From Macrostomum lignano (Eukaryota), in NCBI GenBank assembly GCA_002269645.1, contig NIVC01000758.1, positions 384,993 to 448,992 of the forward strand: a stretch of DNA of 64,000 nucleotides. Direction: 5' to 3'. Under the pieces are notes generated by a model that had not been told where the DNA came from, searched no databases, and saw only the letters and a program-made list of their open reading frames with translations. Numbering within the stretch: the first letter of the stretch is position 1; every line of letters starts with the position of its first letter. The translations under genes were made by a program, and so were the position numbers. Below, one piece after another: positions 1-51,500 of the stretch.

Positions 1-1413
1 TAGTGCCCACTCTTCTATGCTGGCGCCACGATCGTCTTCCAGTTGGTGGGTGTCCCACCCGCCGTGGCCGTTAAAGTCGCCGGCGATGACGGTGCTGCTA
101 AGAGTGGGGAGGCTGTACCAGTCGGGAAACCAAGCTTCATCGGGCCTCTGGCAGCTGTTTGGTGGCGCGTAGACGCTGATGAGGGTGACGGGTCTACGTC
201 CTGGCGGGCAGATGGTGATGGCGGCTGCATCGAGGGGCTCCGGGCAGTGGCAGGTGACTTGGTGAAACGGCAGGTCGTCGCGGACAAGGATCAAGCAGCC
301 GCCTCGGCCGGTAGGGCGGGGAATGTTCTTTTTTTGGTTTTTTTTGATAACGCCTTCGCGTCCGGTGGCTGTCTCCTGATCAGTGGTGGTGCTGGGGGCC
401 TGTTGTGTCGCGGGGCCCTGTTGTTGTGGTCTCTGGCAGCACGGGCCTCTGAAATTGGTTCTGTACTCCTTGGTGCTTTTAAGGGCAGCGCATTGAAGAT
501 AGAGCCATGCGTGACAGGCACTGCATTGGACACAGGCACGGCTTCTTGGGATATTCCGGTTGCAGATTGGGCAGATCCAGCGGCCGGTGGCTGTCGGAGC
601 GAGATGGTCTCTGGGCGGGGGATCGGCTCCGCCGGAGTTGTTGGACTCGGCCGGGCTGGTGTCCACCGATGCGGCGTGAGGGCGGGCGTCCAGGGGGGTG
701 TCGCGGTTGCTGCATGCTATGCGTCTGCTGCGGCAGCCTGGGCACCAGGATGCGCGTTCCAGTGGCCAGCGAAGGCGGCAGCGGGGCCGTTGGACGGTGC
801 GCGACGTTCCCCGCGCTTGGATGATTGGTGGGCGGGGCTGCGGGTCAGGGGCCGCGGTCAGCTCCGTGGTATCCGCGGCGATGTCCGTTTTGCAGACCCC
901 GTCTTTTCGTGCCGCGACGCAGTATCCAGGGGGTGGGATGAAGTTGGCCCCTGGGAGGAGCTTCGTCTCCTGGAGGAGGGCAGCGCAGGGGCGCAGGCGG
1001 TTAAGGCAGTTGGCCAGCTCCGTGCGGCGAGCCTGCAACCCATTGCAGTTGAGTTGCAGGACGTGGAGCTCTTGGCCTCGCTTAGCGCTGCGCGTGTGCT
1101 GCCTTCTGCTGCGATGGCCGGGGGCTGACGATCCGCCCCGGAGGCGGCGGATGGAAAAAATGTCCGGTTGATCGGCACTGGGTTTTTCGGCCTGGTGGTA
1201 ATCGGCGTAGCATCCCTGTTGGTTGCGACACTTCGTCGCCTCCGAGGGGTGGTGGTTGGAGGCGTTTGGGGGCCCCGCGTGAAGGGGGTCGCATGCCATG
1301 GGTTGGTGTTGGCCAACCCACTCCGCGCTGTCTGGCGACTCGTTCAGAGAGTAGCCGTTAGTGCGAACCCAAGGTGTCAGCTGCTGCGGCTCCTGCCATG
1401 GCTGCTGCCCTGA
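1..1413 (-). mobile_element. Non-LTR retrotransposon (LINE) 5' part: open ORF with APE/EEP endonuclease and internal PHD-like finger; runs off the window edge
   Basis: Manual translation: the minus frame is open from 1413 to 1, first ATG at 1299; absent from the ORF track because there is no stop in the window. Motifs LHVLQLNCNGL (~1068-1036), LLQETK (978-961), GY...RKD, GRGGCLILVR (309-280), VYAPP (174-160) and GDFNGH (81-64) are the canonical APE motifs of LINE ORF2. Confidence 0.9.
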
Positions 1414-4400
1414 TCATCCACAGACTAATCAGAGGGTCACAGCTTACTAACTGGGTATTCTGCCCTGAGGCAGGTTTCTCAGATTCTGAGTCTAGACTTC
1501 TCTACCCTGTGGTAGGATTTTTTTCTGCCTTCTAAAAGTGATCTCTTACATTCTAGATCTGGATATCTCATTCTTCTAAGAACAGTTTTAACTCTCCCAA
1601 TCTTGGGGTTTCTAGTGCTTCTAAATAATTAAGTCAGCAAGTATTTATCAAGCTTCAATTCAAAATACTAGAATAGATTGTAAGCCCAAAGCTAAGCAAA
1701 GCAAGTTGTTTCTTCTCCTGCTAACAGCTTGTGTATTTATACTCCTTTTTGGCAAGTTTTAAAACAAATAAAATTTCATAATTTTTTTAATTTCACAATA
1801 TTACTGATATTATACTTATTAAAACAAAATAGCCTAATTTCAAATGTGATAAATTCTAGGAAAGTGATGCTATTAGCATTGCTAAACAATAACTAGCCTA
1901 TTTCACAATTAAATTTATTTAATGTTGATTTTTGTCTTCCTATTTATCTTACTTGCCAAGCAAGCAACTTTACCTATATCATATTGGCTATGACTTCCTC
2001 TAGGAAGCCAGAAGAGGCTTGGCTTATATTGGCATGAAATTTTGAGCAGTTGTTTTTTATTCTACCATCCCTGATCCCTATTGGAATGCTTTTCAAAAAC
2101 TATAAAAAACATGCAAAAACTAAGAGCTTTTAGTCTTTCAGACAAGCACAGCAGAGCTAGGGACAAGGTGGGCCTAAGCCTAGGCCTACCCAATAATTTT
2201 GTTGGAGAGGCACTAGCTTCTTAGGCCTAATATTTCAAATTGAAATTCAATGGCATCAAATTTATCTAAAATTAAAATTAAACGAAATTTAAATGTAAAT
2301 GTCTTGGCCATAGCCTAGATTACATTGGTAGCTTTTCTAGCATCAGAATATTATAACACTTTAAGTTTAGAAATAAGTGCCATAAGCCCTTATGCTTACT
2401 TGGGCTAATATATTTCCTTTGAAAGTAAATTGTAATTTTTTAATCTTATTTAAAATAGTTTGTAGGCCTAGTTTAGGCTTAAGTTAGTTTTCTAAAATCA
2501 AAATAATTTAGTGAATAAAACTTGACTATTGCCTATTTATTATATTATAGTAATTGGTCTTGGTAGTTTTTATTGTTATAGTGATTATAAAAAGAGCAAA
2601 ATGGTTATTTTTATAGTCAGTATACAAAACAAATCTATAAAATAAGTAGGCCTAGGCCTAATTAACTTGCAGTGCAAATCATAAGAGGCTACTAAATTAA
2701 AATAAGGAGACATGCTAATTGCTATTAATATATTAATTAATATTATGGTAACTTCCAGTATGGTTTTTGTTATCAACCTTAGCTAAGGCTATGTGACCTA
2801 ATTGCTAATTATCAATATAAATGAAATTTCTTTCTAGGATCATAAAAATAACCATTTCACTATTTATATTATATGGTTATCTTAAATTCTTAAATCTGTT
2901 TCTTTGTTTTATGCATTGATTATAAGAATAATCTTGCTATATTTATAGTTACTATAATATAATATGGTTACTATATTAGACTTAATTCCTTTAGTTTAGG
3001 CCTAGCTTTATTCTCTATGTAGCCACACTCTTAAATCTGTTATAATATACCAGAAAAAATGACCCCCTATACCATAATGCATAAATTCAATTTACACTAA
3101 CAAAACAAATTTACTTGTGATCTATAGCTGGACATTATCAAAAAAGCATTTGCAACAATAAAGAATAAAGGACCTTGCATTGTGACAATATAGGACCCTT
3201 TCTTGCATTCTGACATTTTGGTCTTTTGTATGCCAATAGCTACGCCATAGGCTAGCTCTGCAGTGCATTTTTAGTAGATTATTCTGTATGCTAAATATTT
3301 AAGGCCAATTGTTTTTTAAGTCCATTGTATACTAGGATTTTTTGGCATATATATAAGATTTGGGATTGGGGCTATGCAGGCTTCTCTAAGCCTAAAATAT
3401 TATATCAATGTTCCTTTTGTGTTGTAGCCTCCCCTTAACCTCAATATTTTGCTTTTACTAGGGCCTGCTTTCTTTGAAAAAGCCCTTAGATGTATACTAG
3501 ATGCCTAGGCCTATAAATTTTAGGTAGGGCCTATATTATGATATATCAGTTTTTTATAGTGTTAGACAATAGACATATAGGCCTACAATGTTTAGGTATT
3601 CACTTTGCATTATTTTTAAATTTTAGTATTCTTATACTATGCCTATACTTAATTTTTTGTGTTAATTGCAATATTTAGATTTTTCATACTAGCATAACAT
3701 GCCTTATTTTCTATGCCATGCCAAAGCTAAAATTTAACAGAACTATGCCAAGCAGTTCTATAAAAAGGGCTACTTAATCCAATACAATATTTAATAGGAT
3801 TCTACCTTATGTTTTATACATTTTTTGCTAGTATTAAGATATGAAATTATATTTAAGGTCCAACTTCAAGATGCAATTTTGTAGTATCTTTATCACAAAA
3901 AACCTAAAAAAAACTTGGCCTTGCCCTAGGTTTTACTAAAATTAAGATATAAAATTTCATCTAAGACTTAAGGTCTAAATTCAGTTCTAGGATACAGTTT
4001 AGAAAATGCAATCTTTCTACTAGAATAGAATAGACTTTACTTTATTGAACCTAGCTATTTGTTTGTAAATATATTGTTTACATATACTCATTGTCTTGTC
4101 AGTCTTATAAAGCTCTTTGTTAGATTAAAAATGTCAGAGGTTTCATTGGCTACATCTGTTTGTTATATATGTATATGTGTATGTTGAAGCCACAGGAAAA
4201 TTTTATGCAAAAGCAAGAGAGTGAGAAACATTAAGTTGCGTGCAATATGCACCCAAAAACCAACAGGAATCCCTATAAAATAGGTAATGTGTGTGACTTA
4301 ATTTTGGCATCCTGAATGTAGAACCTGAATTCCACATTAATGCCCCCTCTATTTCAAACTTAGTGCCATTTAACTTAACTTCCACATGCTTGTAATTCAT

Positions 4401-4929
4401 ATTTCATTTCGGCAACCCAAAGCTGTTAACTCAAAAATATGAAATAAGAAAAAGTGGAAAAGAGTTGCCCTGTTAGCCCAAATATCAAATTTCGCAACAC
4501 AGAACTGCAACAAGAAACTTTCATCATTTAATTTGAATTAAATGCTGTGATGAAGAGAAATAGACAGTGAAAGCTACCAAGAGATGAGAATAAGAGAAGT
4601 TATTTAGGATGAGTCAGTTGAGAACTAGGTTAAACAGTTGCAAGTTCTCACTGAACGCTAATTGACTATTGTGCGCGCGCATGCACTGCTGCTATCAGCT
4701 GATAGAACAGAAACTTCACAAGAAGGTCACCGCCTGTCCGCCCCGAGCCGTGCGCTCACTATCAGTAGCTGGCGATAACGGGGGGGGGGTCGGTGAAACA
4801 ATATTCGAGCCCGTTAAAGAGCGCACTTTATTGATCTGAATTTTCCTGTCGCTGCAAACCAACTGGCGGTGTGAGAGACAGGCAGGGATAAGAAAAAACT
4901 TCTGTTGAAGACCCCCCCCCAGCTCGGCC

Positions 4930-7900
4930 ATGGCACCCAGCGCATCGAAGCTCGTTCTCAGCGGCGTCACTTTCGTTCGGGCGCATCAGCGCGGCGTTGC
5001 GGTGACCGCCGGGGCCTTGCTCATGTCGCTGCACCTGCGCAAGCTGCTCCGCATGCTGACTGGCAGGCGGCAGAAACGCGACAGAGGCGGCGGCGGCGGC
5101 GGCGGCAAAGACGGCGCAGACGGCAGTCAGGCTGACGAATCGTCGAAAGCCACAGTCGACTTGGCCTTCATTCGTTCCCTGATTCGCCTGGTGCGAATCT
5201 GCGTGCCCTCCCTGCTGAGCCGGGAGTTCGGCATCCTGCTGCTGCACACGACCTCCCTTGTCACCAGGACTTTCCTGTCTGTCTATGTGGCCAAGCTGGA
5301 CGGCCGGATTGTGAAAGCCATCGTGCAGCGGAATGTACTGCGGTTCGTGCTGCAGATCGCCAAGTGGCTGCTGCTGGCCCTGCCCGCCACCTTTGTCAAT
5401 TCTTTGATCCGCTTTCTGGAGAGCCAGCTGGCGTTGGCGCTCAGAACTCGGCTGGTGATGCACTGCTACCAGGAGTACTTCAAGGATCAGACCTACTATA
5501 AGGTGAGGCCGCGAGACTGCGAATTCAGCGGCTGCAAGCCGTCTTATGGGGGTTCAAGTACCCGTTAGATAGGGCCAGGCATTCCATTAGTCAGTGGGAG
5601 ACCTCATTAGACAGTTAGAGACACCCCATTAGACAGTTGGAGACACACCATTAGACAGTTGGAGACACCCCATTAGACAGTTGGAGACACACCATTAGAC
5701 AGTTGGAGACACACCATTAGACAGTTGGAGACACCCCATTAGACAGTTGGAGTCTGGAGACACTATTAGACAGTTGGAGACACACCATTAGACAGTTGGA
5801 GACACACCATTAGACAGTTGGAGACACACCATTAGACAGTTGGAGACACACCATTAGACAGTTGGAGACACACCATTAGACAGTTGGAGACACCCCATTA
5901 GACAGTTGGAGTCTGGAGACACTATTAGACAGTTGGAGACACACCATTAGACAGTTGGAGACACACCATTAGACAGTTGGAGACACCCCATTAGACAGTT
6001 TGAGACACCCCATTAGACAGTTGGAGACACACCATTAGACAGTTGGAGACACCCCATTAGACAGTTGGAGTCTGGAGACACTATTAGACAGTTGGAGACA
6101 CACCATTAGACAGTTGGAGACACACCATTAGACAGTTGGAGACACACCATTAGACAGTTGGAGACACCCCATTAGACAGTTGGAGACACCCCATTAGACA
6201 GTTGGAGACACCCCATTAGACAGTTGGAGACACCCCATTAGACAGTTGGAGACACACCATTAGACAGTTGGAGTCTGGAGACACTATTAGACAGTTGGAG
6301 ACACACCATTAGACAGTTGGAGACACACCATTAGACAGTTGGAGACACACCATTAGACAGTTGGAAACACACCATTAGACAGTTGGAGACACCCCATTAG
6401 ACAGTTGGAGACACACCATTAGACAGTTGGAATCTGGAGACACTATTAGACAGTTGGAGACACACCATTAGACAGTTGAAGACACACCATTAGACAGTTG
6501 GAGACACCCCATTAGACAGTTGGAGACACCCCATTAGACAGTTGGAGACACCCCATTAGACAGTTGGAGACACACCATTAGACAGTTGGAGACACCCCAT
6601 TAGACAGTTGAAGTCTGGAGACACTATTAGACAGTTGGAGACACACCATTAGACAGTTGGAGACACACCATTAGACAGTTGGAGACACACCATTAGACAG
6701 TTGGAGACACCCCATTAGACAGTTGGAGACACACCATTAGACAGTTGGAGACACCCCATTAGACAGTTGGAGTCTGGAGACACTATTAGACAGTTGGAGA
6801 CACACCATTAGACAGTTGGAGACACACCATTAGACAGTTGGAGACACACCATTAGACAGTTGGAGACACCCCATTAGACAGTTGGAGACACCCCATTAGA
6901 CAGTTGGAGACACCCCATTAGACAGTTGGAGACACCCCATTAGACAGTTGGAGACACACCATTAGACAGTTGGAGACACCCCATTAGACAGTTGGAGACA
7001 CACCATTAGACAGTTGGAGACACCCCATTAGACAGTTGAAGTCTGGAGACACTATTAGACAGTTGGAGACACCCCATTAGACAGTTGAAGTCTGGAGACA
7101 CTATTAGACAGTTGGAGACACCCCATTAGACAGTTGGAGACACACCATTAGACAGTTGGAGACACACCATTAGACAGTTGGAGACACCCCATTAGACAGT
7201 TGGAGACACACCATTAGACAGTTGGGAGACACCATTAGACAGTTTGAGACACTATTAGACAGTTGGAGACACCCTAATAGACAGTGGAAGACACCCATTA
7301 GAAAGTGGGGGACACTGCCATTAGACAGTGGGAGACACCCCTCTTAAACAGCCACGGGGCAGCCAAACCCCCATCAGTGAGGTGGCAGGGCCCCATGCCA
7401 GCCCCAAGTTCCCCAGTAAACTGAAAGCCAGCATCGCCAACCCCATCCCCGCACAGGTGGGCAACCTGGACAGCCGGCTGCAGAACGCTGACCAGTGCCT
7501 GACTGAGGACATCTCGCAGTTCACGGGCAGCCTGGCGCACCTGTACTCACACCTGACCAAGCCCATCCTGGACGTGGCCATCATGTCCTACACTCTGTAC
7601 AGCCTGGCCCGCAGCCGTGGCGCCTCCAGCAAGTTTCCCAGCGTGTTCGCCACGGCCGTCATTCTGTTCACTGGCGAGGTTCTGCGCACCGTGTCGCCCA
7701 AGTTCGGCCGTCTGGTTGCCGAGGAGGCCAGGCGGAAGGGCCGCCTCCGCTTCATTCACAGCCGGGTGATCGCCTGCGCAGAGGAGATCGCCTTCTACGG
7801 AGGCCACAAGCTGGAGCGTCGGGTGCTCGAGGACTCCTACGAGTCCTTGGCCCGACAGTCCAGTCGGATCTTCCGCCAGCGCCTCTGGTACGTCATGCTG

Positions 7901-10174
7901 GAGCAGTTCCTCATGAAGTACGTGTGGAGCGCAGCCGGCATGACCATGGTGGCCGTGCCCATCCTCACCGCCACGGGGCAGCGGCCCGATGGCAGCCTGG
8001 TGGATGAGGACCAGGACGGCGGAGTGTCCGAGCGGACTCAGGTGGGAATTGGGAATGAGCTTTAGACCGGTATACCGATTCATTACCCTCTGTTAACTCC
8101 GATAGGTCCATTCCCTTCACCTAATCTGATTTCCTGCATCTAATCTGATTCCCTGCATCTCTAATCTAATTCCCCGCATGTCTAATCTTATTCCCTGCAT
8201 CTCTAATCTAATTCCCTGCTTCTCTAACCTGAATCCCTGCATCTCTAACCTGAATCCCTGCATCTCTAACCTGAATCCCTGCATCTCTAATCTGAATCCC
8301 TGCATCTCTAACCTGAATCCCTTTATCTCTAATCTGAATCCCTGCATCTCTAATCTGAATCCCTGCATCTCTAATCTGAATCCCTGCATCTCTAACCTGA
8401 ATCTTTTTATCTCTAACCTGAATCCCTGCATCTCTAATCTGAATCCCTGCACCCTACGGTGCATTCAAATCCTCACTCTGGTCCCAATTCGATTCCCCGA
8501 ATCGCCGGCCCCACAGGCCTTCACCACGGCCCGCAATCTGCTTGTCAGCGCCGCCGACGCCATCGAGCGCATCATGACGTCATACAAGGAGATCACGGAG
8601 CTCTCGGGCTACACCAGCCGCGTCTCCTCAATGCTGAATGTGTTCAGCGATGTGCAGAACGGCAAGTTCGTCCGGCCCGGCATGCGGCACACCCGAGGCC
8701 AGGTCACCGAGAGCGCCGACTGCATCGAGCTGTGCGACGTGCCCATCGTTACGCCGAGCGGCGACGTTGTGGCGGAGTCGCTCAGCCTTCGGCTGGACCG
8801 GGGCACCCATCTGCTGATCACTGGTGAGCCAATCAGATCTGAGGAATGAGCAGTACGTTAGTTCAAGGAGCGGGTCAGTCCAGTGTAATTCAAAGTCAAT
8901 AATCATCATCATTCACTCCACCTCATCGCTTGCAAGCTGCACATTGAAGCTCTTCGTTTAAAATCGTTTTTTGTGCACCCATCGGAAACCTTCACCAACT
9001 GTATTGTGGTCTCGAATCGCAGAACTTTTTAGCCAATGCTCGCTTAGTTTTTCCTATGGAGGGAACACTGATCAACAGGGGAACGTAATTTTTAGACAAC
9101 ACCTGGCTTGAGAGAATCAATCTTAAGCTGTAAGCTTTGAGGTGTAGTGTAAGCTTTAGTTTTAACCTTAGCTTGAGGTTTGACTTAAGCTTTGGAATAT
9201 GTACTTTAAGCTTCGGGAAATGTACTTTAAGCTTCGGGAAATGTACTTTAAGCTTCGAGATATGTACTTTAAGCTTCGTGATGTGTACTTTATGCTTCTG
9301 GATTTTCTTTAAGCTTCGGGTATGAAGAAGGTTCTGGATGTACTGATGTGGACTTTAAGATTTGGTGTGGACTTTAAGCTTTGGACTGTATTTCGACTTG
9401 TTTTTTTATACTATTGATTTAAAGGTTTTTGGTACTCGTTAATGGTTTCTTTGCTTTATGTTAAAATGCATATTTTTGTTAATGTACTTTTTTATTGTGC
9501 TTTTATACTTTTTGTTTGTTTACTTCTATTTAATGTATAAGTACAATACTGTCGAACCCGCAGGCCCCAACGGCTGCGGCAAGTCCTCTCTCTTCCGCAT
9601 TCTGTCCGGCCTCTGGCCAGTCTACGGCGGGCGCCTGGTGAAGCCGCCGGTGCAAACTCTCTATTATATTCCGCAGCGGCCCTATCTCAGCATTGGCGAC
9701 CTGCGCGAACAGGTGACGTACCCGGACACAGCCGAGCAGCGCCGAGCCAAAGGCGTCACAGACGGCCAACTGCGCGCGGTGCTGGAGGCCGCGCACCTCG
9801 GCTACCTGCTCGAGCGGGAGGGCGGCTGGACGGCCGTGCGAGAGTGGGCCGACGTGCTCAGCGGCGGCGAGAAGCAGCGGCTCGGCATGGCGCGCCTGCT
9901 GTACCACCGGCCGCTCTTTGCCCTGCTGGACGAGTGCACCTCCGCCGTCAGCATCGACGTCGAGGCGAAGATCTACCAGGCCGCCAAGGACGCCGGCATC
10001 ACCCTGCTGACCATCACGCACCGGCCCTCTCTGTGGCCGTTTCACGACCGCGTGCTCAAGTTCGACGGAGCCGGCGCCTGGTCTCTGGAGGAGATGCCCG
10101 CCGCTGCTGCCACCGCCGCCGCCGCTGCCGCGTCCACCGCCTCGGCAGTTGAGGCGGCGACGAGCGAAGCATAA
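4930..10174 (+). CDS. ABCD1/ABCD2: Peroxisomal ABC half-transporter, ABCD1/ABCD2 (ALDP)-like, 4 exons, ~691 aa
   Basis: Exons 4930-5502, 7457-8041, 8517-8823, 9564-10174 with GT-AG and consistent phases 0,0,1. Motifs: EAA-like EEIAFYGG, Walker A GPNGCGKS split by intron 3, signature LSGGEKQR, Walker [11 protein letters not shown], and [18 protein letters not shown] typical of ABCD1/2. Confidence 0.95.
5586..7335 (+). repeat. 22-bp minisatellite (GAGACACACCATTAGACAGTTG) filling ABCD intron 1
   Basis: Direct inspection: ~75-80 units, with periodic longer variants containing GTCTGGAG. Confidence 0.97.
8120..8452 (+). repeat. 21-bp minisatellite (ATCTCTAACCTGAATCCCTGC) in ABCD intron 2
   Basis: Direct inspection; produces the CISNLNP repeat ORF. 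Confidence 0.95.
9190..9300 (+). repeat. Short 21-bp tandem repeat (GTACTTTAAGCTTCGGGAAAT) in ABCD intron 3
   Basis: About 4-5 degenerate units visible. Confidence 0.8.
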
Positions 10175-10202
10175 GGAACTGGGAGACTTGCGGATCGGAT
10201 CT

Positions 10203-10558
10203 TTGTGATGTGGGATTTCATGGATCTGAGGTCTTTGTGATGTGGGATTTCATGGATCTGAGGTCTTTGTGATGTGGGATTTCATGGATCTGAGGTCTTT
10301 GTGATGTGGAATTTCATGGATCTGAGGTCTTGAGATGTGAGATTTCACGGATCTGAGGTTTTGATATGTGGGATTTCATGGATCTGAGGTCTTGATATGT
10401 GGGATTTCATGGATCTGAGGTCTTGATATGTGGGATTTCATGGATCTGAGGTCTTGATATGTGGGATTTCATGGATCTGAGGTCTTGATATGTGGGATTT
10501 CATGGATCTGAGGTCTTGATATGTAGGATTTCATGGATCTGAGGTCTTGATATGTGGG
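10203..10558 (+). repeat. 31-32-bp tandem repeat downstream of the ABCD stop codon
   Basis: Unit GTGGGATTTCATGGATCTGAGGTCTT(T)G(TG)AT, about 11 copies. Confidence 0.93.
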
Positions 10559-11309
10559 AAGATTCGGATTTTCGGGTGCTGTATGTCTCATTTCCATATC
10601 TATTTTTATAGTTATGAGTAGCTCATGCAGTTAATATTGACTTTGGTTAGCCATTGGATGTCCTGCTTATTTCATACTCTGTTCGATTTACTTCATCTTC
10701 TCCACTTCAAAAAAATGCAAATTCTCTTTATTCAATTCCGCCTGTTGTGTTTTGGCATTGCGGCCCTGACTGACAGTTTGCTGTCCCTCTGCTGCCTACT
10801 CGTAGTAGTATTAGAAATCTGCAGTCCCAGTCTAAAGCCGAGCTTGCTTTCACAATCTGCTGTAAAGCAGAGAAGTGGTTTTCAAATTTAATTCGGTAGT
10901 TTTTGTGTTCTTTCTAGCCGTGCCGATGAAATCAATCGGTTTATTAATTATCAAGTATTTTCCCTGGGCGTCCTTTGCTACTCAATATCTTAACAGAAGC
11001 AAGTAGTGCGAATTAGCGAATCAATTTTTCTGAAACTTTCCGTTCTCTCTTTGAAATATGTGCATGTATACAATAAGCTACGCAAAATGATGTGCAATGC
11101 GTATTGTGTTGTGTGCGGATTTTATTTGAGTAAAAATATTTCAGCTATGGTATTAGATTTCCTATTAGCATTCTTATTTGCGATCGTTGCTTTAAAATAA
11201 AAGCTATCAAGCTTTACTTACTGTAATGAGAGTCATTTATTAAACACAATGTTTAAAGTACAGGCTTGGATTTATTTCTGCTCTGGGCTTTGTGAGTCTT
11301 ATCAATCAG

Positions 11310-19322: not shown

Positions 19323-22300
19323 CTACTCCTCAGCTCCCAGCCTCTCTTCCGCATCCCCGTCCAGCGCCATCGCCTCCCCATAGGGCAGCTCCTTCTCGGC
19401 GATCTCGCGCGCCTCCTCAGCCCGCAGCTCCTCCTCCTCGGCCTCGCGCGGCTCGCCGCACAGCCGCCCGAGCGGCGCCGCCCAGGCCCGGAACGGCCCG
19501 ACGCCCGGCCGCTCCACCAGGCACTCGGTGAAGTCCAAGAAGCTGGCGAAGTACTTGGCGAATGCCGGGTAGCCGCGGCCATTCGCGGTGTCCCAGGCGG
19601 CCAGACCGGTCTGCGTGAGGCCGGACAACAGGCGCAGCATGACGGCCTCCTCCAGGTCGTCCATGGCGTGCTGGCCGCCAGCGCCGAAGCGCAGAAGGAA
19701 AACCGCGCAGTAGCGGAGCAGCGTGGCAGTGAGGCTGCTCAGGCCGCCAGGCCGGCCGTGATGGTCGGGGAGGCCAGCAGGATCGAGATGTGCTGCGGGT
19801 GGCCACCGGGGAGTCAGTGGGGCAGTGGGTCATTGGGGCAGTGGGTCAGTGGGTCATTGGGGCAGTGGGTCAGTGGGTCATTGGGGCAGTGGGTCATTGG
19901 GGCAGTGGGTCAGTGGGTCATTGGGCAGTGGGTCAGTGGGTCATTGGGGCAGTGGGTCAGTGGGTCATTGGGGCAGTGGGTCAGTGGGTCATTGGGGCAG
20001 TGGGTCAGTGGGTCATTGGGGCAGTGGGTCATTGGGGCAGTGGGTCAGTGGGTCATTGGGGCAGTGGGTCAGTGGGTCATTGGGGCAGTGGGTCAGTGGG
20101 TCATTGGGGCAGTGGGTCAGTGGGTCATTGGGGCAGTGGGTCATTGGGGCAGTGAGTCAGTGGGTCATTGGGGCAGTGGGTCAGTGGATCACTGGGTCAA
20201 TGTATCAGTACGTCAGTAGGTCAGTTGATCAGTGAGTCAGTGGGTCAGTGGGGCAGTCGGTCAGTGTGTCAGTGGGTCAGTGTGGCAGTGTTTCAGAGGT
20301 TTAATGGGTCAGTGTGTCAGAGGGTCATTATGGGTCAATGGGTCAATTAGTCACAGTGTGCTAGTGAGTCAGAGGGTCAATGGGTTAGAAGGTTAATGGG
20401 TCAATGGGTCAGTTTGGACAAAGGATCAATATGGGTCAATGGTCAATGGGTCAGTGGGTCAGTTTTGTCAGAGGATCAATATGGGTCAATGGTCAATGGG
20501 TCAGTGGGTCAGTTTGGTCAGAGGATCAATATGGGTCAATGGGTCAGTGGGTCAGTTTGGTCAGAGGATCAATATGGGTCAATGGGTCAATGGGTCAGTT
20601 GGTCAGAGCAATGGTGGGTCAGAGCAGTGGTGGGCCATAGCAGTGGTGGGTCAGTGGGTCAGTGCTCACCTGCCTGGTGACGGCAGCGGCCTTGAGTTCC
20701 CACAGCCAGCAGAGCAGGAAGCGGAACAGCCTGCCGGGGTCCTGGCAGTGCAGCACAGGCCGGTAGCTGCCCTCCGAGTTCAGGCGGTCCCGCCAGACTT
20801 TCAGCTCGTCATCAAGCCGTGGCGGAGCAGCGGCAGCCGCCAGCTCCGAGGTTGCGGCGAGGACGGCCTCGAGGGTGAGCCGCCTGGCAACAGGAAGGGC
20901 GGTCAAGCTGTACTTATCCTGGTAATTTGCGGAAAATTCTGTGCAGATGCCAGAGCATCCAAATGCAAAATCTGTTATAGGCATTGTGAAACCGCCTCGG
21001 ACCAAGCTTCAAATGACCTTCAAAAGTCCACCAGCTGTTGATAAATATCAGTTAAGCCAATGAATTTTTAGGCCTTCAAATTTTTTCCACAACACTGAAG
21101 TGTTGCATGGGGAGGAGACGGCCGCATTCATTTGAGGCTTGTGCGCACGGAAGCTGGCCTGCGGGTTGTCCTGAGATTCACACCTCGTGAGGGCCGATTC
21201 CCAAGGCACAGAGGGTGCACATGTCTGACGCAAGGGCTACTCAAGTAGGACGAGAAACCTCGTTTCTTGGAATATGTTTATGAGGCTGGTTTCTGCCTGA
21301 AAAATACACTGCGGAGATAGGAAGTTTTCAGTTTTTCAGAACAAAAATTGTTATTGATTCTTTAACCAAAGCGAACCTGTCCGCGCCCCGCAGCCCGATT
21401 CTTTAACCAAAGCGAACCTGCCCGCGCCCCGCAGCCCGATTCTTTAACCAAAGCGAACCTGCCCGCGCCCCGCAGCCCGATTCTTTAACCAAAGCGAACC
21501 TGCCGCGCCCCGCAGCCCGATTCTTTAACCAAAGCGAACCTGCCCGCGCCCCGCAGCCCGATTCTTTAACCAAAGCGAACCTGCCCGCGCCCCGCAGCCC
21601 GATTCTTTAACCAAAGCGAACCTGCCCGCGCCCCGCAGCCCGATTCTTTAACCAAAGCGAACCTGCCCGCGCCCCGCAGCCCGATTCTTTAACCAAAGCG
21701 AACCTGCCCGCGCCCCGCAGCCCGATTCTTTAACCAAAGCGAACCTGCCCGCGCCCCGCAGCCCGTTTCTTTAACCAAAGCGAACCTGCCCGCGCCCCGC
21801 AGCCCGATTCTTTAACCAAAGCGAACCTGCCCGCGCCCCGCAGCCCGATTCTTTAACCAAAGCGAACCTGCCCGCGCCCCGCAGCCCGTTTCTTTAACCA
21901 AAGCGAACCTGTCCGCGCCCCGCAGCCCGATTCTTTAACCAAAGCGAACCTGCCCGCGCCCCGCAGCCCGTTTCTTTAACCAAAGCGATCCTGTCCGCGC
22001 CCCGCAGCCCGATTCTTTAACCAAAGCGAACCTGTCCGCGCCCCGCAGCCCGATTCTTTAACCAAAGCGAACCTGCCCGCGCCCCGCAGCCCGATTCTTT
22101 AACCAAGGCGAACCTGTCCGCGCCCCGCAGCCCGATTCTTTAACCAAGGCGAACCTGTCCGCGCCCCGCAGCCCGTTTCTTTAACCAAAGCGAACCTGTC
22201 CGCGCCCCGCAGCCTGATTCTTTAACCAAAGCGAACCTGTCCGCGCCCCGCAGCCCGATTCTTTAACCAAAGCGAACCTGCCCGCGCCCCGCAGCCCGAT

Positions 22301-25300
22301 TCTTTAACCAAGGCGAACCTGCCCGCGCCCCGCAGCCCGATTCTTTAACCAAGGCGAACCTGCCCGCGCCCCGCAGCCCGATTCTTTAACCAAAGCGATC
22401 CTGTCCGCGCCCCGCAGCCCGTTTCTTTAACCAAAGCGATCCTGTCCGCGCCCCGCAGCCCGATTCTTTAACCAAAGCGATCCTGTCCGCGCCCCGCAGC
22501 CCGATTCTTTAACCAAGGCGAACCTGTCCGCGCCCAGCGACAGCTGCAGCAGCCGGGTGCAGACTGTGTGCACAAGCAGCGACAGCCGGCGCAGCTTCCT
22601 GGCCGCGACGCCGTGCAGTAGCGCCCGCTGCCTGTGGAGATGCTCCTCGTAGGAGAACCGGTGCCCGCAGGCCGCCAGGCCTCGGTCCGGCCACTGCACC
22701 AGCAGGATGCGAATGCGCTTGGAGAATTCCCGGACACCGGCCACCTGGGGTTGCCGACGAGTGGCGGGGCGGGCATTCAATGGCTGCCGGATTTTATGCT
22801 CAGTTGTCACTCGGGTGTCACACAGTTGTCACTCGGATGTCACACAGTTGTCACTCGGGTGTCACACAGTTGTCACTCGGATGTCACACAGTTGTCACTC
22901 GGGTGTCACACAGTTGTCACTCGGGTGTCACACAGTTGTCACTCGGGTGTCACACAGTTGTCACTCGGGTGTCACACAGTTGTCACTCGGGTGTCACACA
23001 GTTGTCACTCGGGTGTCACACAGTTGTCACTCGGGTGTCACACAGTTGTCACTCGGGTGTCACACAGTTGTCACTCGGGTGTCACACAGTTGTCACTCGG
23101 GTGTCACACAGTTGTCACTCGGGTGTCACACAGTTGTCAAACAGGTGTCACTCTGCTGTCATTCGAATGTTATTTAGATGCGATTATATTTGGGGGCTTT
23201 AGATTTTACTCTGATATCACTCAGATGTCACTCATTTGTTACTCCAAAATCACTCTCTTGTTACTCAGCCGTCACTTAGTTGTCATCGAAGTGTTGTCAC
23301 TTTGCCACCACTTTGGTGTCATGCAGATGTTATTTAGAAGTCACCCAGTTGTCTTCAGCACTCTGGCCAACACAGTTGCCCCCCCCACGTCCCACCAGCT
23401 GCTCACCTGAGCATGCGACTGCACCGAGCCGGGCCGCTTCAGCCGCAGGTAGGCGATGGCCAGGGCGGGGCTGAGCCGGCGGCTGAACACCAGCAGGCAG
23501 GCGATGGCGAGGCCGGTGCGGCCCAGCCCGGCGTGGCAGTGCACGGCGATGCGGCCCTCGGTTAGGGCGAACTGCATCACCCGGACAAGATCCAGCATCC
23601 GGTAGAAGCTCGGGCAGGTGTAATCGGCCCAGTACAGGTTGTACACGCTGATGCCGTGGCGCATCAGCTCGGTCTGGTCGTAGGAATAGGGGCCCAGCAG
23701 GCCGCGGCCGCAGTGCGCGTGCTCGTGCGGCTCCTGCACACAGAACACCGACTTGACGCTGTGCCTGGGAGCGGTGTGGCGATGGCCTTCCGGTTGCTAT
23801 GAATCTACTGCTGCTTCCAGTTGCTATGAATCTACTGCTGCTTCCGGTTGCTATGAATCTACTGCTGCTTCCGGTTGCTATGAATCTACTGCTGCTTCCG
23901 GTTGCTATGAGTCTACTGCTGCTTCCAGTTGCTATGAATCTACTGCTGCTTCCGGTTGCTATGAATCTACTGCTGCTTCCGGTTGCTATGAATCTACTGC
24001 TGCTTCCAGTTGCTATGAATCTACTGCTGCTTCCGGTTGCTATGAATCTACTGCTGCTTCCGGTTGCTATGAATCTACTGCTGCTTCCGGTTGCTATGAG
24101 TCTACTGCTGCTTCCAGTTGCTATGAATCTACTGCTGCTTCCGGTTGCTATGAATCTACTGCTGCTTCCGGTTGCTATGAATCTACTGCTGCTTCCAGTT
24201 GCTATGAATCTACTGCTGCTTCCGGTTGCTATGAATCTACTGCTGCTTCCGGTTGCTATGAATCTACTGCTGCTTCCGGTTGCTATGAGTCTACTGCTGC
24301 TTCCAGTTGCTATGAATCTACTGCTGCTTCCGGTTGCTATGAATCTACTGCTGCTTCCGGTTGCTATGAATCTACTGCTGCTTCCGGTTGCTATGAATCT
24401 ACTGCTGCTTCCGGTTGCTATGAATCTACTGCTGCTTCCGGTTGCTATGAATCTACTGCTGCTTCCGGTTGCTATGAGTCTAGCTTCCGGTTGCTATGAA
24501 TCTACTGCTGCTTCCGGTTGCTATGAGTCTAGCTTCCGGTTGCTATGAATCTACTGCTGCTTCCGGTTGCTATGAGTCTAGCTTCCGGTTGCCATGAATC
24601 TACTGCTGCTTCCAGTTGCTATGAATCTAGCTTCCGGTTGCTATGAATCTAGCTTCCGGTTCCTATATCTAGCTTTCGGTTGCTATGAATCTAGCTTCCT
24701 GTTGCTATGAATCTAGCTTCCGGTTCCTATATCTAGCTTCCGGTTGCTATGAATCTAGCTTCCGGTTCCTATATCTAGCTTTCGGTTGCTATGAATATAG
24801 CTTCCTGTTGCTATGAATCTAGCTTCCTGTTGCTATGAATCTAGCTTCCGGTTGCTATGAATCTAGCTTCCGGTTCCTATATCTAGCTTTCGGTTGCTAT
24901 GAATCTAGCTTCCTGTTGCTATGAATCTAGCTTCCGGTTCCTATATCTAGCTTCCGGTTGCTATGAATCTAGCTTCCGGTTCCTATATCTAGCTTTCGGT
25001 TGCTATGAATATAGCTTCCTGTTGCTATGAATCTAGCTTCCTGTTGCTATGAATCTAGCTTTCGGTTGCTATGAATCTACTGCTGCTTCCGTTTGCTATG
25101 AATCTACTGTTGCTTCCGGTTGCTATGAATCTAGCTTCCGGTTGTTATGAATCTAGCTTCCGGTTGTTTTGAATCTAGCTTCCTGTTGCTATGAATCTAG
25201 CTTCCGGTTGCTATGAATCTACTGTTGCTTCCGGTTGCTATGAATCTAGCTTGCGGTTGTTATGAATCTAGCTTGCGGTTGTTATGAATCTAGCTTCCGG

Positions 25301-26200
25301 TTTCTATGTATCTACTGTTGCTTCCGGTTGTTATGAATCTAGCTTCCGGTTGCTATGAATCTAGCTTGCGGTTGTTATGAATCTAGCTTGCGGTTGCTAT
25401 GAATCTAGCTTTCGGTTGCTATGAATCTACTGCTGCTTCCGTTTGCTATGAATCTACTGTTGCTTCCGGTTGCTATGAATCTAGCTTCCGGTTGTTATGA
25501 ATCTAGCTTCCGGTTGTTTTGAATCTAGCCTCCGGTTGTTTTGAATCTAGCTTCCGGTTGCTATGAATTTAGCCACCTGTTGCTCAAAAAGTCTTACTCA
25601 GTGAGTTGTTTAATGATGTCAAACTGTTTTATTGCTTCATCGCTTGGCCGGCTCATAGCCAGAATTTCTGGGGTAACCCTGTCAATAAGAGTAAGAGGGG
25701 CGGCAATTGCTGCTGTGTTATTTTCATCATAGGAAATTTAAATCAATACATGGCGAAGGCATCTAGGAACCGCCTTCTGCTTAGCTGCCTGCTGCTCACC
25801 AGTGCGAGTACAGGCCCTGTATGGCAAAGCAGTCCCTGTGGAAGCGCCCCTCCGGGCAGCAGTATTTGCAGTTCCTCCCGCCGCAGAAACTGCGACACAA
25901 TGACTCGCCAGACAGGCCGGACCGAAGGGCGTCCCCAATGGCCGGGTAGAGCGCCTCCGGTGGGTTTTCTATAGCATTTTTAAAACCAAATCATATTTGC
26001 GATGTTTGCAAACCGTATGCAACAGTATTGAACAATGCTGAATTACCTTCGATTTTCTCAACATCCGCGTCGCCCCACTCGACGCTGACCGCAGGATATT
26101 CCTCGACTAGCGGCGACAGGTCCGAATCCTCGGTTTCAATTGAGGACTCCTTTTCTTGTTTATAGCTTTTCTGGCCATTGCTAGCGATTTTCGTATCCAT
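19323..26200 (-). CDS. PTPDC1: Protein tyrosine phosphatase domain-containing protein 1 (PTPDC1)-like, at least 7 exons; frameshift in last exon
   Basis: Exons 26200-26047, 25968-25800, 25678-25598, 23764-23407, 22744-~22520 (end uncertain), 20918-20670, 19792-19323. CGGRNCKY, YSHWVTPEILAMSRP, catalytic HCHAGLGRTG, RQRALLHG and VWRDRLNS…DP…WLWELK match PTPDC1 as recalled. The last exon needs +1 nt within 19741-19792. Confidence 0.9.
19812..20665 (+). repeat. CAGTGGGT(CATTGGGG) 8/16/24-bp repeat filling PTPDC1 intron 6
   Basis: Direct inspection; begins immediately after the donor at 20669. Confidence 0.93.
21355..22530 (+). repeat. 41-bp minisatellite overlapping the 3' end of PTPDC1 exon 5
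   Basis: Unit CTTTAACCAAAGCGAACCTGCCCGCGCCCCGCAGCCCGATT, about 28 copies. Confidence 0.96.
22800..23140 (+). repeat. 22-bp minisatellite (TGTCACTCGGGTGTCACACAGT) in PTPDC1 intron 4
   Basis: About 15 near-perfect units, then degenerate copies to ~23340. Confidence 0.95.
23786..25565 (+). repeat. 27-bp then 22-bp related minisatellite in PTPDC1 intron 3
   Basis: TTGCTATGAATCTACTGCTGCTTCCGG (27) to ~24600, then mainly TTGCTATGAATCTAGCTTCCGG (22). Confidence 0.96.
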
Positions 26201-48549: not shown

Positions 48550-51500
48550 ATGCTTACACAATCATATCTGCTTCAAGAAACATATGTTGGCTCCAATGAA
48601 CCAACAGAATATGTTCTTACCAATCAGAAGCTGGTCACCAAAAGCAAAAAATTAAAGCTTGATAGCTTAGTTAGCACTGCTAAGGTAAGCTGTTAAACAA
48701 CTCAATCAATAATTCTCTGTTGTTTCAAATCCATTTGACTTCCTTGATTTCTGCAAAATTTAAGCAAATCCTACTTTAATTCTCCCTAATTCAGTAACCC
48801 AAGTCTAAGCCGATCCTTTTCTTATGCACCAAATCTCAGCAGCGTTCCACAACAAGCTCAAGCCAATTCCCGTAACCCGCCGCAGGACGTCTTCCTGCCG
48901 CAGGGCTACCCGGACTCGGTGTCCGCTGACTACCTGACCTACCAGATTTGGGACACCGCCCAGGCCTTCTGCAGCTCCCTTACCAGCGCCCTGGCCAGCC
49001 GGGCCGTCCTGACCGGCTACGGTGTCGGCGACCAGGGCGCATCGGTGGCGGCCGCCACCCTCGCCTGGCTGCTGCGCGACGGCTGCGGCATGGTGGGCCG
49101 CATCCTGTTCGCCTGGCTGTATGGCACCGCTCTGGACTGGGACTGCAAGCGCTACCGGCTGCTGGCGGATGTGCTGAACGACTTGGCCATCCTGATACAG
49201 CTGCTCTGCCCGCTGGCCGGGCCGCCCGGCTCGCCCGCTGTAGTCGCCGTCCTGTGCATCGCCTCCGTGACGCTAGCGCTGGTCACCGTCTGCGGCGGCG
49301 CCACCAGAGCCGCGTTTACTATGCACCAGGTGTGTTTACTATGCACCAGGTGTGTTTACTATGCACCAGGTGTGTTTACTATGCATCAGGTGTGTTTACT
49401 ATGCACCAGGTGTGTTTACTATGCATCAGGTGTGTTTACTATGCATCAGGTGTGTTTACTATGCACCAGGTGTGTTTACTGTGCACCAGGTGTGTTTACT
49501 ATGCACCAGGTGTGTTTACTATACATCAAGTGTGTTTACTATGCACCAGGTGTGTTTACTATGCACCAGGTGTGTTTACTATGCACCAGGTGTGTTTACT
49601 ATGCATCAGGTGTGTTTACTATGCACCAGGTGTGTTTACTATGCATCAGATGTGTTTACTATGCATCAGGTGTGTTTACTATGCACCAGGTGTGTTTACT
49701 ATGCATCAGGTGTGTTTACTATGCACCAGGTGTGTTTACTATGCACCAGGTGTGTTTACTATACATCAGGTGTGTTTACTATGCACCAGGTGTGTTTACT
49801 ATGCATCAGGTGTGTTTACTATGCACCAGGTGTGTTTACTATGCACCAGGTGTGTTTACTATGCACCAGGTGTGTTTACTATGCACCAGGTGTGTTTACC
49901 ATGCACCAGGTGTGTTTACTATGCACCAGGTGTGTTTACTATGCACCAGGTGTGTTTACTATACATCAAGTGTGTTTACTATGCACCAGGTGTGTTTACT
50001 ATGCACCAGGTGTGTTTACTATGCACCAGGTGTGTTTACTATGCACCAGGTGTGTTTACTATGCACCAGGTGTGTTTACTATGCACCAGGTGTGTTTACT
50101 ATGCACCAGGTGTGTTTACTATGCACCAGGTGTGTTTACTATGCAACAGGTGTGTTTACTATGCACCAGGTGTGTTTACTATACATCAGGTGTGTTTACT
50201 ATGCACCAGGTGTGTTTACTATGCACCAGGTGTGTTTACTATGCATCAGGTGTGTTTACTATGCACCAGGTGTGTTTACTATGCACCAGGTGTGTTTACT
50301 ATGCACCAGGTGTGTTTACTATGCACCAGGTGTGTTTACCATGCACCAGGTGTGTTTACTATGCACCAGGTGTGTTTACTATGCACCAGGTGTGTTTACT
50401 ATACATCAAGTGTGTTTACTATGCACCAGGTGTGTTTACTATGCACCAGGTGTGTTTACTATGCACCAGGTGTGTTTACTATGCACCAGGTGTGTTTACT
50501 ATGCACCAGGTGTGTTTACTATGCACCAGGTGTGTTTACTATGCACCAGGTGTGTTTACTATGCACCAGGTGTGTTTACTATGCAACAGGTGTGTTTACT
50601 ATGCACCAGGTGTGTTTACTATACATCAGGTGTGTTTACTATGCACCAGGTGTGTTTACTATGCACCAGGTGTGTTTACTATGCACCAGGTGTGTTTACT
50701 ATGCACCAGGTGTGTTTACTATACATCAGGTGTGTTTACTATGCATCAGGTGTGTTTACTATGCACCAGGTGTGTTTACTATGCATCAGGTGTGTTTACT
50801 ATGGGTGTGTCCGTAGCCAATGGGTTTCACAGGGACATTCACGAGATGTCGCGTCGAGGTGTCGTGGCGGTTTCGTGTCCCATGGTCGATAACTGGGTGG
50901 GGAATTAGAGTTAGCAGCCTAAGGCCAAGGAAGGAACTCAAGCCTCCCGGGGTGTCGGCCAGTCTGTTAAATACGCTGTCAGTTAGATACAATTATTGTA
51001 AAACAGGAGCCGGTAGGGTGCCTGCGATGTCAGCGAATGGTGGGAGGCATCGGCTTGAGAATTCTTCAACACGATTTAACATCTTAAGCCTGGTTCACAT
51101 TTCCGCAAATAGCTCCGTGCTTCAAACTAATAGCTGTTCGCCGCCGCTACCAGCTGATTGCGAACGCTACTATCCGTGCGCAGCTCTACTATCCGAAAGT
51201 CCGCCGCTCCTGGCGGACTCTAATAGTGATTTTATTTGGTTCTATTCATTAGAACTAGAAAGGAGAATATAACTTTCAATTTTATGCATGGCAAACGAAA
51301 CCGAAATGCACCCCATTCACATAAACACTCACAACTCCTTGCTTTGAGTTGTCCGCTTCTGCAGCATGGATGGCAGGGGTAGGCGTACAGTAAATTTAAA
51401 CGATTGTGTCATTGCTCACTGCTCACTGTACAATGAGTACAGACAATTTCTTGCGCAACCAGACAGGAGCACAGCTGGAGGCTATATGAAACGAATAGAA

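What the first reader, a model, noticed from the sequence alone, without database searches (positions are those of the whole stretch)
310..900. LINE AP endonuclease split by an in-frame ~197-aa insertion carrying a PHD-like finger
Seen: in the open minus-strand ORF, the APE motifs GY..RKD (ends 901) and GRGGCLILVR (starts 309), normally a few residues apart, are separated by ~197 codons. The insert contains a Cys cluster (CRLRWPLERASWCPGC…C) and a PHD-like finger WICPICNRNIPRSRACVQCSACHAWLYLQC…FRGPCC (579-436; the ligand His is replaced by Tyr). Established: PHD fingers occur in some LINEs, typically in ORF1 or N-terminal to the endonuclease. Inference: a putative chromatin-reader module is grafted into a surface loop of the nuclease and could couple nicking to histone state. 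The frame is intact and CpG-rich, so the copy looks young.
Basis: partly seen in the sequence, partly recalled or inferred. Interest (0 to 1): 0.72.

Follow-up and report, generated by a model that had tools for sequence, protein, structure and literature searches.

The report
LINE nuclease with zinc-finger loop insert
A flatworm jumping gene (LINE) carries a conserved ~200-residue insert holding two zinc-finger-like modules, one of them a PHD finger, in the DNA-contacting loop of its cutting enzyme. This layout was not found in the searchable literature and may help the enzyme choose where to cut.

Summary
On the minus strand, the endonuclease motifs GYCVAARKD (ends at 901) and GRGGCLILVR (starts at 309) are separated by 197 in-frame codons. 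In 71 related endonucleases the same loop has 11-26 residues.

The window comes from Macrostomum lignano or a very close relative. The feature is the 5' end of a LINE: the element starts at 1372, its ATG is at 1299, and it runs off the window at base 1.

The insert is not private to this copy. A second M. lignano LINE family, 51% identical, has the same order in one open frame: nuclease N-part, Cys cluster, PHD, nuclease C-part. The two modules are conserved (68% and 43% identity, no gaps). The linkers are not (23-37%, with indels).

- **Cys cluster:** a basic four-Cys motif with no Pfam or PDB match. It is shared by a wider group of split-nuclease LINEs.
- **PHD finger:** a true PHD homologue. 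In relatives it sits in front of an unsplit nuclease, which is a published layout.

The loop corresponds to DNA-contacting residues of human L1-EN (Lys70) and APE1 (Gly127/Tyr128).

Histone reading is unproven. The finger family is strongly basic, and this copy alone has Tyr in place of the zinc-binding His.

I rate it a new variant of a known kind.

The parts
1300..1372 (-). 5' UTR of the LINE. The element's 5' end is at 1372.
   Evidence: Homology to the insert-free paralogous locus L006 stops exactly at window 1373. The sister family's copy in L004 starts at the homologous TGGG, next to its own empty-site paralogue L005.
1132..1299 (-). Start codon (1297-1299) and a 56-residue leader peptide that ends in the ubiquitin-tail-like RLRGG (1132-1146).
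   Evidence: RLRGG lies at the same aligned place in the L004 family (LHRVLRLRGG) and in P0273.
901..1071 (-). N-terminal part of the AP-type endonuclease (strands 1-3), with the catalytic Asn (LNCNG) and Glu (QETK) and ending in GYCVAARKD.
   Evidence: AlphaFold2 pLDDT is 89-98.
310..900 (-). In-frame 197-codon insert in the beta3-beta4 loop: linker, Cys cluster, linker, PHD finger, linker. Net charge +15.
   Evidence: The same order occurs in the L004 and L002 M. lignano copies.
712..780 (-). Basic four-Cys motif C-x11-WC-x2-C-x6-C (CRLRWPLERASWCPGCRSRRIAC), here called the Cys cluster.
   Evidence: 68% identical to the sister family. Shared with P0002 (two copies), P0008, P0027, P0079, P0073, P0106, P0273 and L003. 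No Pfam or PDB match. pLDDT 81-88 in the window model.
436..579 (-). PHD finger of C4HC3 type. The His ligand is replaced by Tyr (codon TAT at 499-501).
1..309 (-). Central part of the endonuclease, from GRGGCLILVR on, with catalytic Tyr (VYAPP) and Asp/Asn (GDFN). It is cut by the window edge about 95 residues before the end of the domain.
   Evidence: (Pfam Exo_endo_phos on residues 364-458). pLDDT 88-98.

Best explanation
This is the 5' third of a single-ORF LINE (non-LTR retrotransposon) in Macrostomum lignano or a very close relative. Its AP-type endonuclease is intact in fold, but its beta3-beta4 loop has been expanded by about 200 residues.

The insert holds two basic, Cys-rich modules joined by disordered linkers:
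1. A four-Cys motif that matches no described family. It marks a wider group of split-endonuclease LINEs.
2. A PHD finger of the kind that related LINEs carry in front of the endonuclease.

The layout is a lineage feature kept under selection. It is not an accident of this copy.

Inferred mechanism: the loop lies on the DNA-binding face of the enzyme. The insert would therefore act as an extra nucleic-acid or chromatin-binding arm held beside the target DNA a few base pairs upstream of the nick. It would raise affinity or bias the choice of site for target-primed reverse transcription.

In this particular copy the PHD has probably lost one zinc site (His to Tyr).
For: Shown by tools:
- Position and size of the split.
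- The window's first ABCD exon is 98% identical to an M. lignano protein.
- A paralogous locus with 95.7% identical flanks lacks the element, which sets the 5' end at 1372.
- A second M. lignano family (L004, protein PAA91395.1) has leader-RLRGG, nuclease N-part, Cys cluster, PHD and nuclease C-part in one open frame of more than 700 codons.
- Identity between the two families by segment: nuclease N-part 72%, Cys cluster 68%, PHD 43% with no gap and all Cys kept, nuclease C-part 58%, linkers 23-37% with indels.
- The catalytic Asn, Glu, Tyr, Asp and Asn are present in the window.
- AlphaFold2 folds the nuclease around the insert in both families, and the nearest structures are LINE endonucleases.
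- PHD homology.
- The Cys cluster recurs in the same loop in at least eight other elements from compositionally different genomes.
- The family profile aligns the insertion point to L1-EN residues N66-A72.

From the literature:
- L1-EN Lys70 contacts phosphates -4 to -6 of the non-nicked strand (PMC8565326).
- I place APE1 Gly127/Tyr128, which span the minor groove (PMC7504742), in the same loop. That placement rests on my own recall of the APE1 sequence and was not tested here.

Inferred: that the insert binds DNA or chromatin. This rests on its position and its net charge of +15.
Against: - No binding or nicking data exist.
- The linkers are predicted disordered, so the modules could reach elsewhere.
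- The PHD of this copy lacks its His ligand.
- The rest of the element (end of the nuclease, reverse transcriptase) lies outside the window, so its integrity is unknown.
- No other copy of the window's own family could be retrieved.
- The nuclease tree does not resolve whether the loop insert arose once.
Confidence: 0.6

Rival explanations
1. The inserted PHD finger reads a histone mark such as H3K4me3 and couples nicking to chromatin state.
For: - The family profile's best solved matches include methyl-lysine readers (TAF3, PHF13, BPTF, Pygopus, PHF2).
- The two Trp that form the TAF3 cage (W868, W891; PMC12238850) align with W279 and W303 of the window protein. They are W or Y in 29 of 40 and W in 33 of 40 family members.
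- The window copy sits about 3.5 kb upstream of, and divergent from, a gene start. That is a single case.
Against: - TAF3 cage and Arg2-binding residues D877 and D889 are replaced by neutral or basic residues.
- The finger family is basic (median +5.5, window +8) whereas TAF3 PHD is -7. The H3 tail is itself basic.
- This copy has Tyr at the His ligand position.
- The other known insertion of this architecture lies inside a coding exon, not at a promoter.
Confidence: 0.2
2. The insert is a tolerated, functionless loop expansion, and the window copy is simply decaying.
For: - Most of the insert has low predicted order (pLDDT 28-60).
- His to Tyr in this copy.
- The sister family's duplicate copy L002 carries three frameshifts.
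Against: - The two modules are conserved well above the linkers between families whose synonymous sites are saturated.
- Both families keep long open frames.
- The Cys cluster is kept in the same loop in elements from AT-rich and GC-rich genomes.
- Both families have insert-free paralogous sites, so elements with this layout did transpose.
Confidence: 0.12
3. Assembly error, nested insertion or chimeric copy that places a PHD-coding fragment inside the nuclease gene by accident.
For: Related elements normally carry the PHD in front of the nuclease.
Against: - The same order is found in an independent, 51%-identical family at two other loci of a different assembly.
- There is no second nuclease N-part between the PHD and the C-part.
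- The frame is continuous.
Confidence: 0.02

Closest known systems
Single-ORF AP-endonuclease LINEs with 2A peptide, PHD, endonuclease and reverse transcriptase (e.g. Crack-17_BF, CR1-1/17/26_BF, STR-24/25/34/35_SP; Odon et al. 2013, PMC3708506)
   Same: - One long ORF, a short N-terminal leader, a PHD finger of the same sequence family and an AP-type endonuclease.
- 46 of about 152 retrieved relatives have exactly 2A then PHD then unsplit nuclease.
- The window's finger is 42% identical to that of P0007, including the string CNRNIPRS.
   Different: - The PHD lies inside the nuclease (beta3-beta4 loop), not in front of it.
- An extra four-Cys module precedes it.
- The 2A motif is replaced by RLRGG.
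Split-endonuclease relatives found here (P0002/L001, L003, P0008, P0027, P0079, P0073, P0106, P0273)
   Same: - Insert of 96-302 residues at the same loop, with the same basic C..WC.GC..C motif.
- P0273 also has RLRGG.
- P0027, L001 and P0273 carry RNase H after the reverse transcriptase.
   Different: - None has a PHD in the loop.
- P0008 has its PHD in front, after a 2A peptide.
- P0002 and L003 have two Cys clusters instead.
Human L1 endonuclease and APE1 (solved with DNA)
   Same: - Same fold and catalytic residues.
- The loop that carries the insert contains L1-EN Lys70. By my recalled APE1 sequence it also contains APE1 Gly127/Tyr128. Both touch DNA.
   Different: In those enzymes the loop has about 7 residues. 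Target preference in L1-EN has been ascribed to another hairpin (betaB6-betaB5), which I state from my own knowledge.
Histone-reading PHD fingers (TAF3, BPTF, PHF13, Pygopus)
   Same: C4HC3 spacing and both cage Trp positions.
   Different: - Opposite net charge.
- The acidic contact residues are absent.
- The last ligand pair is often an adjacent CC.
- In the window, His is replaced by Tyr.

Membership tests
AP-type (exo-endo-phosphatase fold) LINE endonuclease | Catalytic residues Asn, Glu, Tyr, Asp/Asn, Asp and His in conserved motifs | tested here: inconclusive
   The first five are present in the window. The last Asp and His lie beyond the window edge. They are present in the sister family (PDITW, SDHLPI).
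AP-type (exo-endo-phosphatase fold) LINE endonuclease | Sequence-profile membership | tested here: met
   The window alone scores 22.4 bits on Pfam Exo_endo_phos, against a cut-off of 24.5, because it is split and truncated. The family profile hits L1-EN at E 1e-26 and TRAS1 EN at 1e-18.
AP-type (exo-endo-phosphatase fold) LINE endonuclease | Four-layer alpha/beta sandwich fold | tested here: met
   AlphaFold2 gives pLDDT 80-98 on both halves. Foldseek top hits are 1WDU, 1VYB, 7N8S and 2EI9.
LINE / non-LTR retrotransposon | Reverse transcriptase downstream of the endonuclease in the same element | not testable with these tools
   That part lies outside the window. It is present downstream in the sister family (L002, L004) and in L001, P0027 and P0273.
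LINE / non-LTR retrotransposon | Insertion polymorphism (filled versus empty site) | tested here: met
   L006 lacks the window's element. L005 lacks the L004 element. Target-site duplications could not be seen.
PHD finger (Pfam PF00628) | Eight zinc ligands C4-H-C3 with canonical spacing | tested here: not met
   Seven of eight are present. The His position is Tyr in the window, against His in 39 of 40 family members. The sister family has all eight.
PHD finger (Pfam PF00628) | Profile score above threshold | tested here: inconclusive
   The window finger scores 16.5 bits, E 0.009, against a cut-off of 24. 36 of 40 homologues hit PHD, and the family profile hits solved PHDs at E 3e-8.
H3K4me3-reading PHD subclass | Aromatic cage plus acidic contacts for the H3 N-terminus and Arg2 | tested here: inconclusive
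   The equivalents of W868 and W891 are kept. D877, M882 and D889 are not. The charge is reversed.
2A-PHD-endonuclease LINEs (Odon et al. 2013) | 2A motif D(V/I)ExNPGP near the N-terminus, then PHD, then the nuclease | tested here: not met
   The window has no NPGP. RLRGG occupies that place, and the PHD is internal to the nuclease.
Ingi / Vingi / I clades | Placement by reverse-transcriptase phylogeny against Repbase reference sequences | not testable with these tools
   There is no RT in the window and no reference set at hand. Split-nuclease relatives carry RNase H and a C-terminal CCHC motif. By my recollection of Kojima et al. 2011, that argues against Vingi and fits the RNase H-bearing I/Ingi/Nimb group.

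The most novel reading that the evidence does not exclude
The loop insert is a natural 'binding module inside a nuclease'. The basic four-Cys knuckle and the PHD, tethered at the DNA-contact loop, would steer first-strand nicking to particular DNA or nucleosome contexts. In the same lineage, the 2A ribosome-skipping leader has been replaced by a ubiquitin-tail RLRGG site that host deubiquitinases would cut. Together these would be two new solutions to LINE targeting and protein processing.
Probability: 0.2. Interest if true: 0.8.

Novelty: new variant of a known kind. Interest (0 to 1): 0.55.

Why it matters
LINE endonucleases are usually treated as compact domains whose target choice comes from small loop differences or from separate flanking domains. 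Here a loop on the DNA-binding face has accepted 100-300 residues carrying zinc modules, and kept them through long evolution in several lineages.

If the insert affects site choice, it shows how retrotransposons evolve new targeting. It would also offer a natural, tolerated insertion point for engineering AP-type endonucleases in retrotransposon-based gene-insertion tools. The uncharacterised four-Cys motif and the RLRGG leader are both directly testable.

Tried and rejected
- **Other copies in the window:** none (tblastn and blastn).
- **Word-indexed protein searches with the window protein:** only P0001, P0002 and P0273. No second copy of the window's own family was found, so I cannot say whether the Tyr is copy-specific within its family.
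- **Two scans of JGI metagenome contigs** (nuclease alignment, then Cys-cluster alignment): no relative found.
- **Cys-cluster profile against PDB and Pfam:** nothing.
- **P0006, whose model starts inside the insert:** contig not on record.
- **3' junction of the L004 element:** not found within the 10 kb fetched, so no target-site duplication or target motif.
- **P0108, with repeated RLRGG:** an unrelated repeat protein.
- **dN/dS between the two families:** synonymous sites are saturated (dS from 0.75 to undefined), so the ratios of 0.25-0.38 for the modules are only rough.
- **Nuclease tree:** six of seven split sequences fall in one 15-member clade, but the tree needs up to five changes and has no strong support either way.
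- **Literature searches** for a split or zinc-finger-bearing LINE endonuclease: nothing found. Repbase could not be consulted.
- **CpG content as an age marker:** rejected.
- **Bacterial promoter and terminator scan at the 5' end:** irrelevant to a eukaryotic element.

Full report
**1. What is in the sequence**

The minus strand of window 1-1413 is one open frame. It holds the motifs of an AP-type LINE endonuclease:
- LHVLQLNCNG, and LLQETKL (958-978)
- GYCVAARKD (901-927)
- then, after 197 codons (900-310), GRGGCLILVR (280-309), VYAPP (160-174) and GDFNGH (64-81)

The frame then runs off the window at base 1. The insert contains CRLRWPLERASWCPGCRSRRIAC (712-780) and WICPIC...CSACHAWLYLQC...GPCC (436-579).

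**2. Whether the split is unusual**

A HMMER search of 1.84 billion representative proteins gave 273 relatives. In an alignment of 77 of them, the distance from the Tyr of GY to the invariant GG is 11-26 residues (median 14) in 71. It is 108-302 in six: window 206, L004 215, P0002 302, P0079 146, P0073 117 and P0008 108. The catalytic Asn, Glu, Tyr, Asp and Asn are in place in the window.

**3. Host and boundaries**

The exon at about 4930-5500 (+) is 98% identical to an M. lignano ABCD transporter. The window is therefore M. lignano or a very close relative.

The matching locus in assembly GCA_002269645.1 (L006) is 95.7% identical in its flanks but has no LINE. Homology begins exactly at window 1373. 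This gives:
- the element's 5' end at 1372
- a 5' UTR at 1372-1300
- a start codon at 1299-1297 (MACDPLH)

The codons upstream of 1372 are host minisatellite DNA that happens to be open. The empty site is better evidence of a fairly recent insertion than CpG content, which equals that of the GC-rich host exon.

**4. The insert is shared**

The closest protein, P0001 (M. lignano), and its cluster mate P0153 (PAA91395.1) led to loci L002 and L004. In L004 a single open frame (7941-10961) runs from a host C2H2 zinc-finger exon into a LINE. That LINE has the same parts in the same order: leader ending in RLRGG, nuclease N-part, Cys cluster, PHD (with His intact: CSGWLHLKC), nuclease C-part and the rest of the domain. 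L002 is a duplicate of that insertion with three frameshifts. L005 is the uninterrupted paralogue.

The two families are 51% identical overall. Identity by segment:

| Segment | Identity |
|---|---|
| Nuclease N-part | 72% |
| Cys cluster | 68% |
| PHD | 43%, no gap, all Cys kept |
| Nuclease C-part | 58% |
| Linkers | 23-37%, with indels |

Synonymous sites are saturated, so dN/dS is only indicative. Two long-diverged lineages that each keep the modules and a long open frame, and that each have an empty site, argue for selection on the layout.

**5. The PHD finger**

Forty homologous fingers were aligned. The profile hits solved PHD fingers (KMT2C/D, Pygopus, TAF3, PHF13, BPTF) at E down to 3e-8, and 36 of 40 members hit Pfam PHD. 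The window's own finger is sub-threshold (16.5 bits).

In 46 of the top 150 relatives the finger, sometimes in two or three copies, lies in front of an unsplit nuclease. It usually follows a 2A-like G(D/I)xExNPGP motif. That layout is published (PMC3708506). None of the 150 has the finger inside the nuclease. So far only the two M. lignano families do.

The His ligand is His in 39 of 40. The window is the exception.

**6. The Cys cluster**

The motif C-(R/K)-x-(R/K)-x6-8-W-C-x-G-C-(R/K)-x3-4-C has a net charge of +5 to +9 over about 35 residues. It sits in the same loop in P0002 and L003 (two copies each), and in P0008, P0027, P0079, P0073, P0106 and P0273. It matches nothing in Pfam or the PDB.

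In the model of the window fragment it is predicted as a compact unit (pLDDT 81-88). In the L004 model, built with a thinner alignment for that part, it is not (42-53).

**7. Structure**

- **Complete L004 domain (436 residues, 78-sequence alignment):** pLDDT 91-98 for the N-part, 80-98 for the C-part and 28-60 for most of the insert. The PHD peaks at 75. Foldseek places it next to TRAS1, L1 and R1 endonucleases at E down to 3e-10.
- **Window's own truncated fragment:** it behaves the same way, with 89-98 and 88-98 for the two nuclease parts. Its Foldseek hits are weaker but of the same kind.

**8. Where the loop sits**

The family profile aligns the insertion point with L1-EN N66-A72, NGKQKKA.
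- In the L1-EN-DNA crystal structure, Lys70, together with Asn16, Asn19, Lys23 and His45, binds phosphates -4 to -6 of the non-nicked strand (PMC8565326).
- In APE1, Gly127 and Tyr128 span the minor groove (PMC7504742). By my recalled APE1 sequence they lie just before the equivalent strand. That placement was not tested with a tool here.

The insert therefore leaves the nuclease at its DNA-binding face.

**9. Function**

What is shown is the anatomy, its conservation and the position of the loop. What is inferred is that two basic zinc modules (whole insert +15) tethered at that point bind the target DNA or nearby chromatin and affect affinity or site choice.

The histone-reader idea has mixed evidence.
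- **For:** the TAF3 cage residues W868 and W891 (PMC12238850; my recalled TAF3 sequence was verified as identical to PDB 2K16) align with conserved Trp in the LINE fingers.
- **Against:** D877 and D889 are not conserved, and the fingers are basic where TAF3 is acidic.

A nucleic-acid-binding role is at least as likely.

**10. Relationships**

In a nuclease tree with the insert removed:
- The window and L004 are sisters (SH-aLRT 86).
- Next come P0273 and P0030. P0273 has RLRGG and a Cys cluster but no PHD. P0030's locus L003 carries two Cys clusters.
- Then come the unsplit P0003 and P0004, which have the PHD in front.

The PHD therefore moved, or was re-acquired, into a loop that already held the Cys cluster. 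Support is modest, and a single origin of the loop insert is neither shown nor excluded.

Relatives P0027, L001 and P0273 carry RNase H and a CCHC motif after the reverse transcriptase. This points to the RNase H-bearing I/Ingi/Nimb group, but the clade could not be tested.

**11. Verdict**

The finding is real and conserved. It is a new variant of a known kind (a PHD-bearing AP-endonuclease LINE). The chromatin-reader mechanism is unproven, and this copy's finger is probably damaged.

Noticed in passing
window 1132-1146 (-); L004 about 9090-9120; P0273 residues 601-605: The leader peptide ends in RLRGG, like the C-terminal tail of ubiquitin. The sister family has LHRVLRLRGG, which I recall as 9 of 10 identical to ubiquitin's LHLVLRLRGG. 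It sits where 46 relatives carry a 2A ribosome-skipping motif. It may be a deubiquitinase-type cleavage site that replaces 2A.
   Followed up: partly
window 1373-1408; L006 6907-7155: The LINE's 5' end abuts a roughly 36-bp minisatellite unit (GGTGTCAGCTGCTGCGGCTCCTGCCATGGCTGCTGC), which is present in three units at the empty site. The sister family's insertion also lies just after a CAG-rich stretch. With only two sites, no conclusion is possible.
   Followed up: partly
window 5584-64000: The window is packed with minisatellite arrays of 13-46-bp units, often 0.3-1.8 kb long. Examples are 5584-7341, 21356-22535, 23787-25568, 49314-50803 and 62606-64000.
   Followed up: no
window 1501-4500 versus 1-1413 and 4801-5500: The CpG observed/expected ratio is 0.07 in the AT-rich spacer (30% GC). 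It is 0.89-0.93 in the GC-rich LINE and host exon. The genome shows sharp compositional mosaicism.
   Followed up: no
window 4930-5500 (+): This is the first coding exon of an ABCD1/2-type peroxisomal ABC transporter. It is 98% identical to M. lignano BOX15_Mlig027819g1. The paralogous locus L006 is 95.7% identical at the DNA level.
   Followed up: yes
L004 7941-10961; L002 1068-2645; L005 8001-8972: NCBI gene models PAA91395.1 and PAA56246.1 fuse a C2H2 zinc-finger gene exon in frame with a LINE insertion. PAA93933.1 is the uninterrupted paralogue. The fused models are probably annotation chimeras, or the gene was truncated by the insertion.
   Followed up: partly
window 43-1128 (+): There is a 361-codon open frame antisense to the LINE ORF. 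It has no homologue and is most likely a by-product of GC-rich codon usage on the sense strand.
   Followed up: no
L001 1933-4143; L003 300-1450: Two relatives carry two tandem copies of the four-Cys motif in the nuclease loop. P0002 has a 302-residue loop. The loop therefore seems to be a hot spot for gaining zinc modules.
   Followed up: partly
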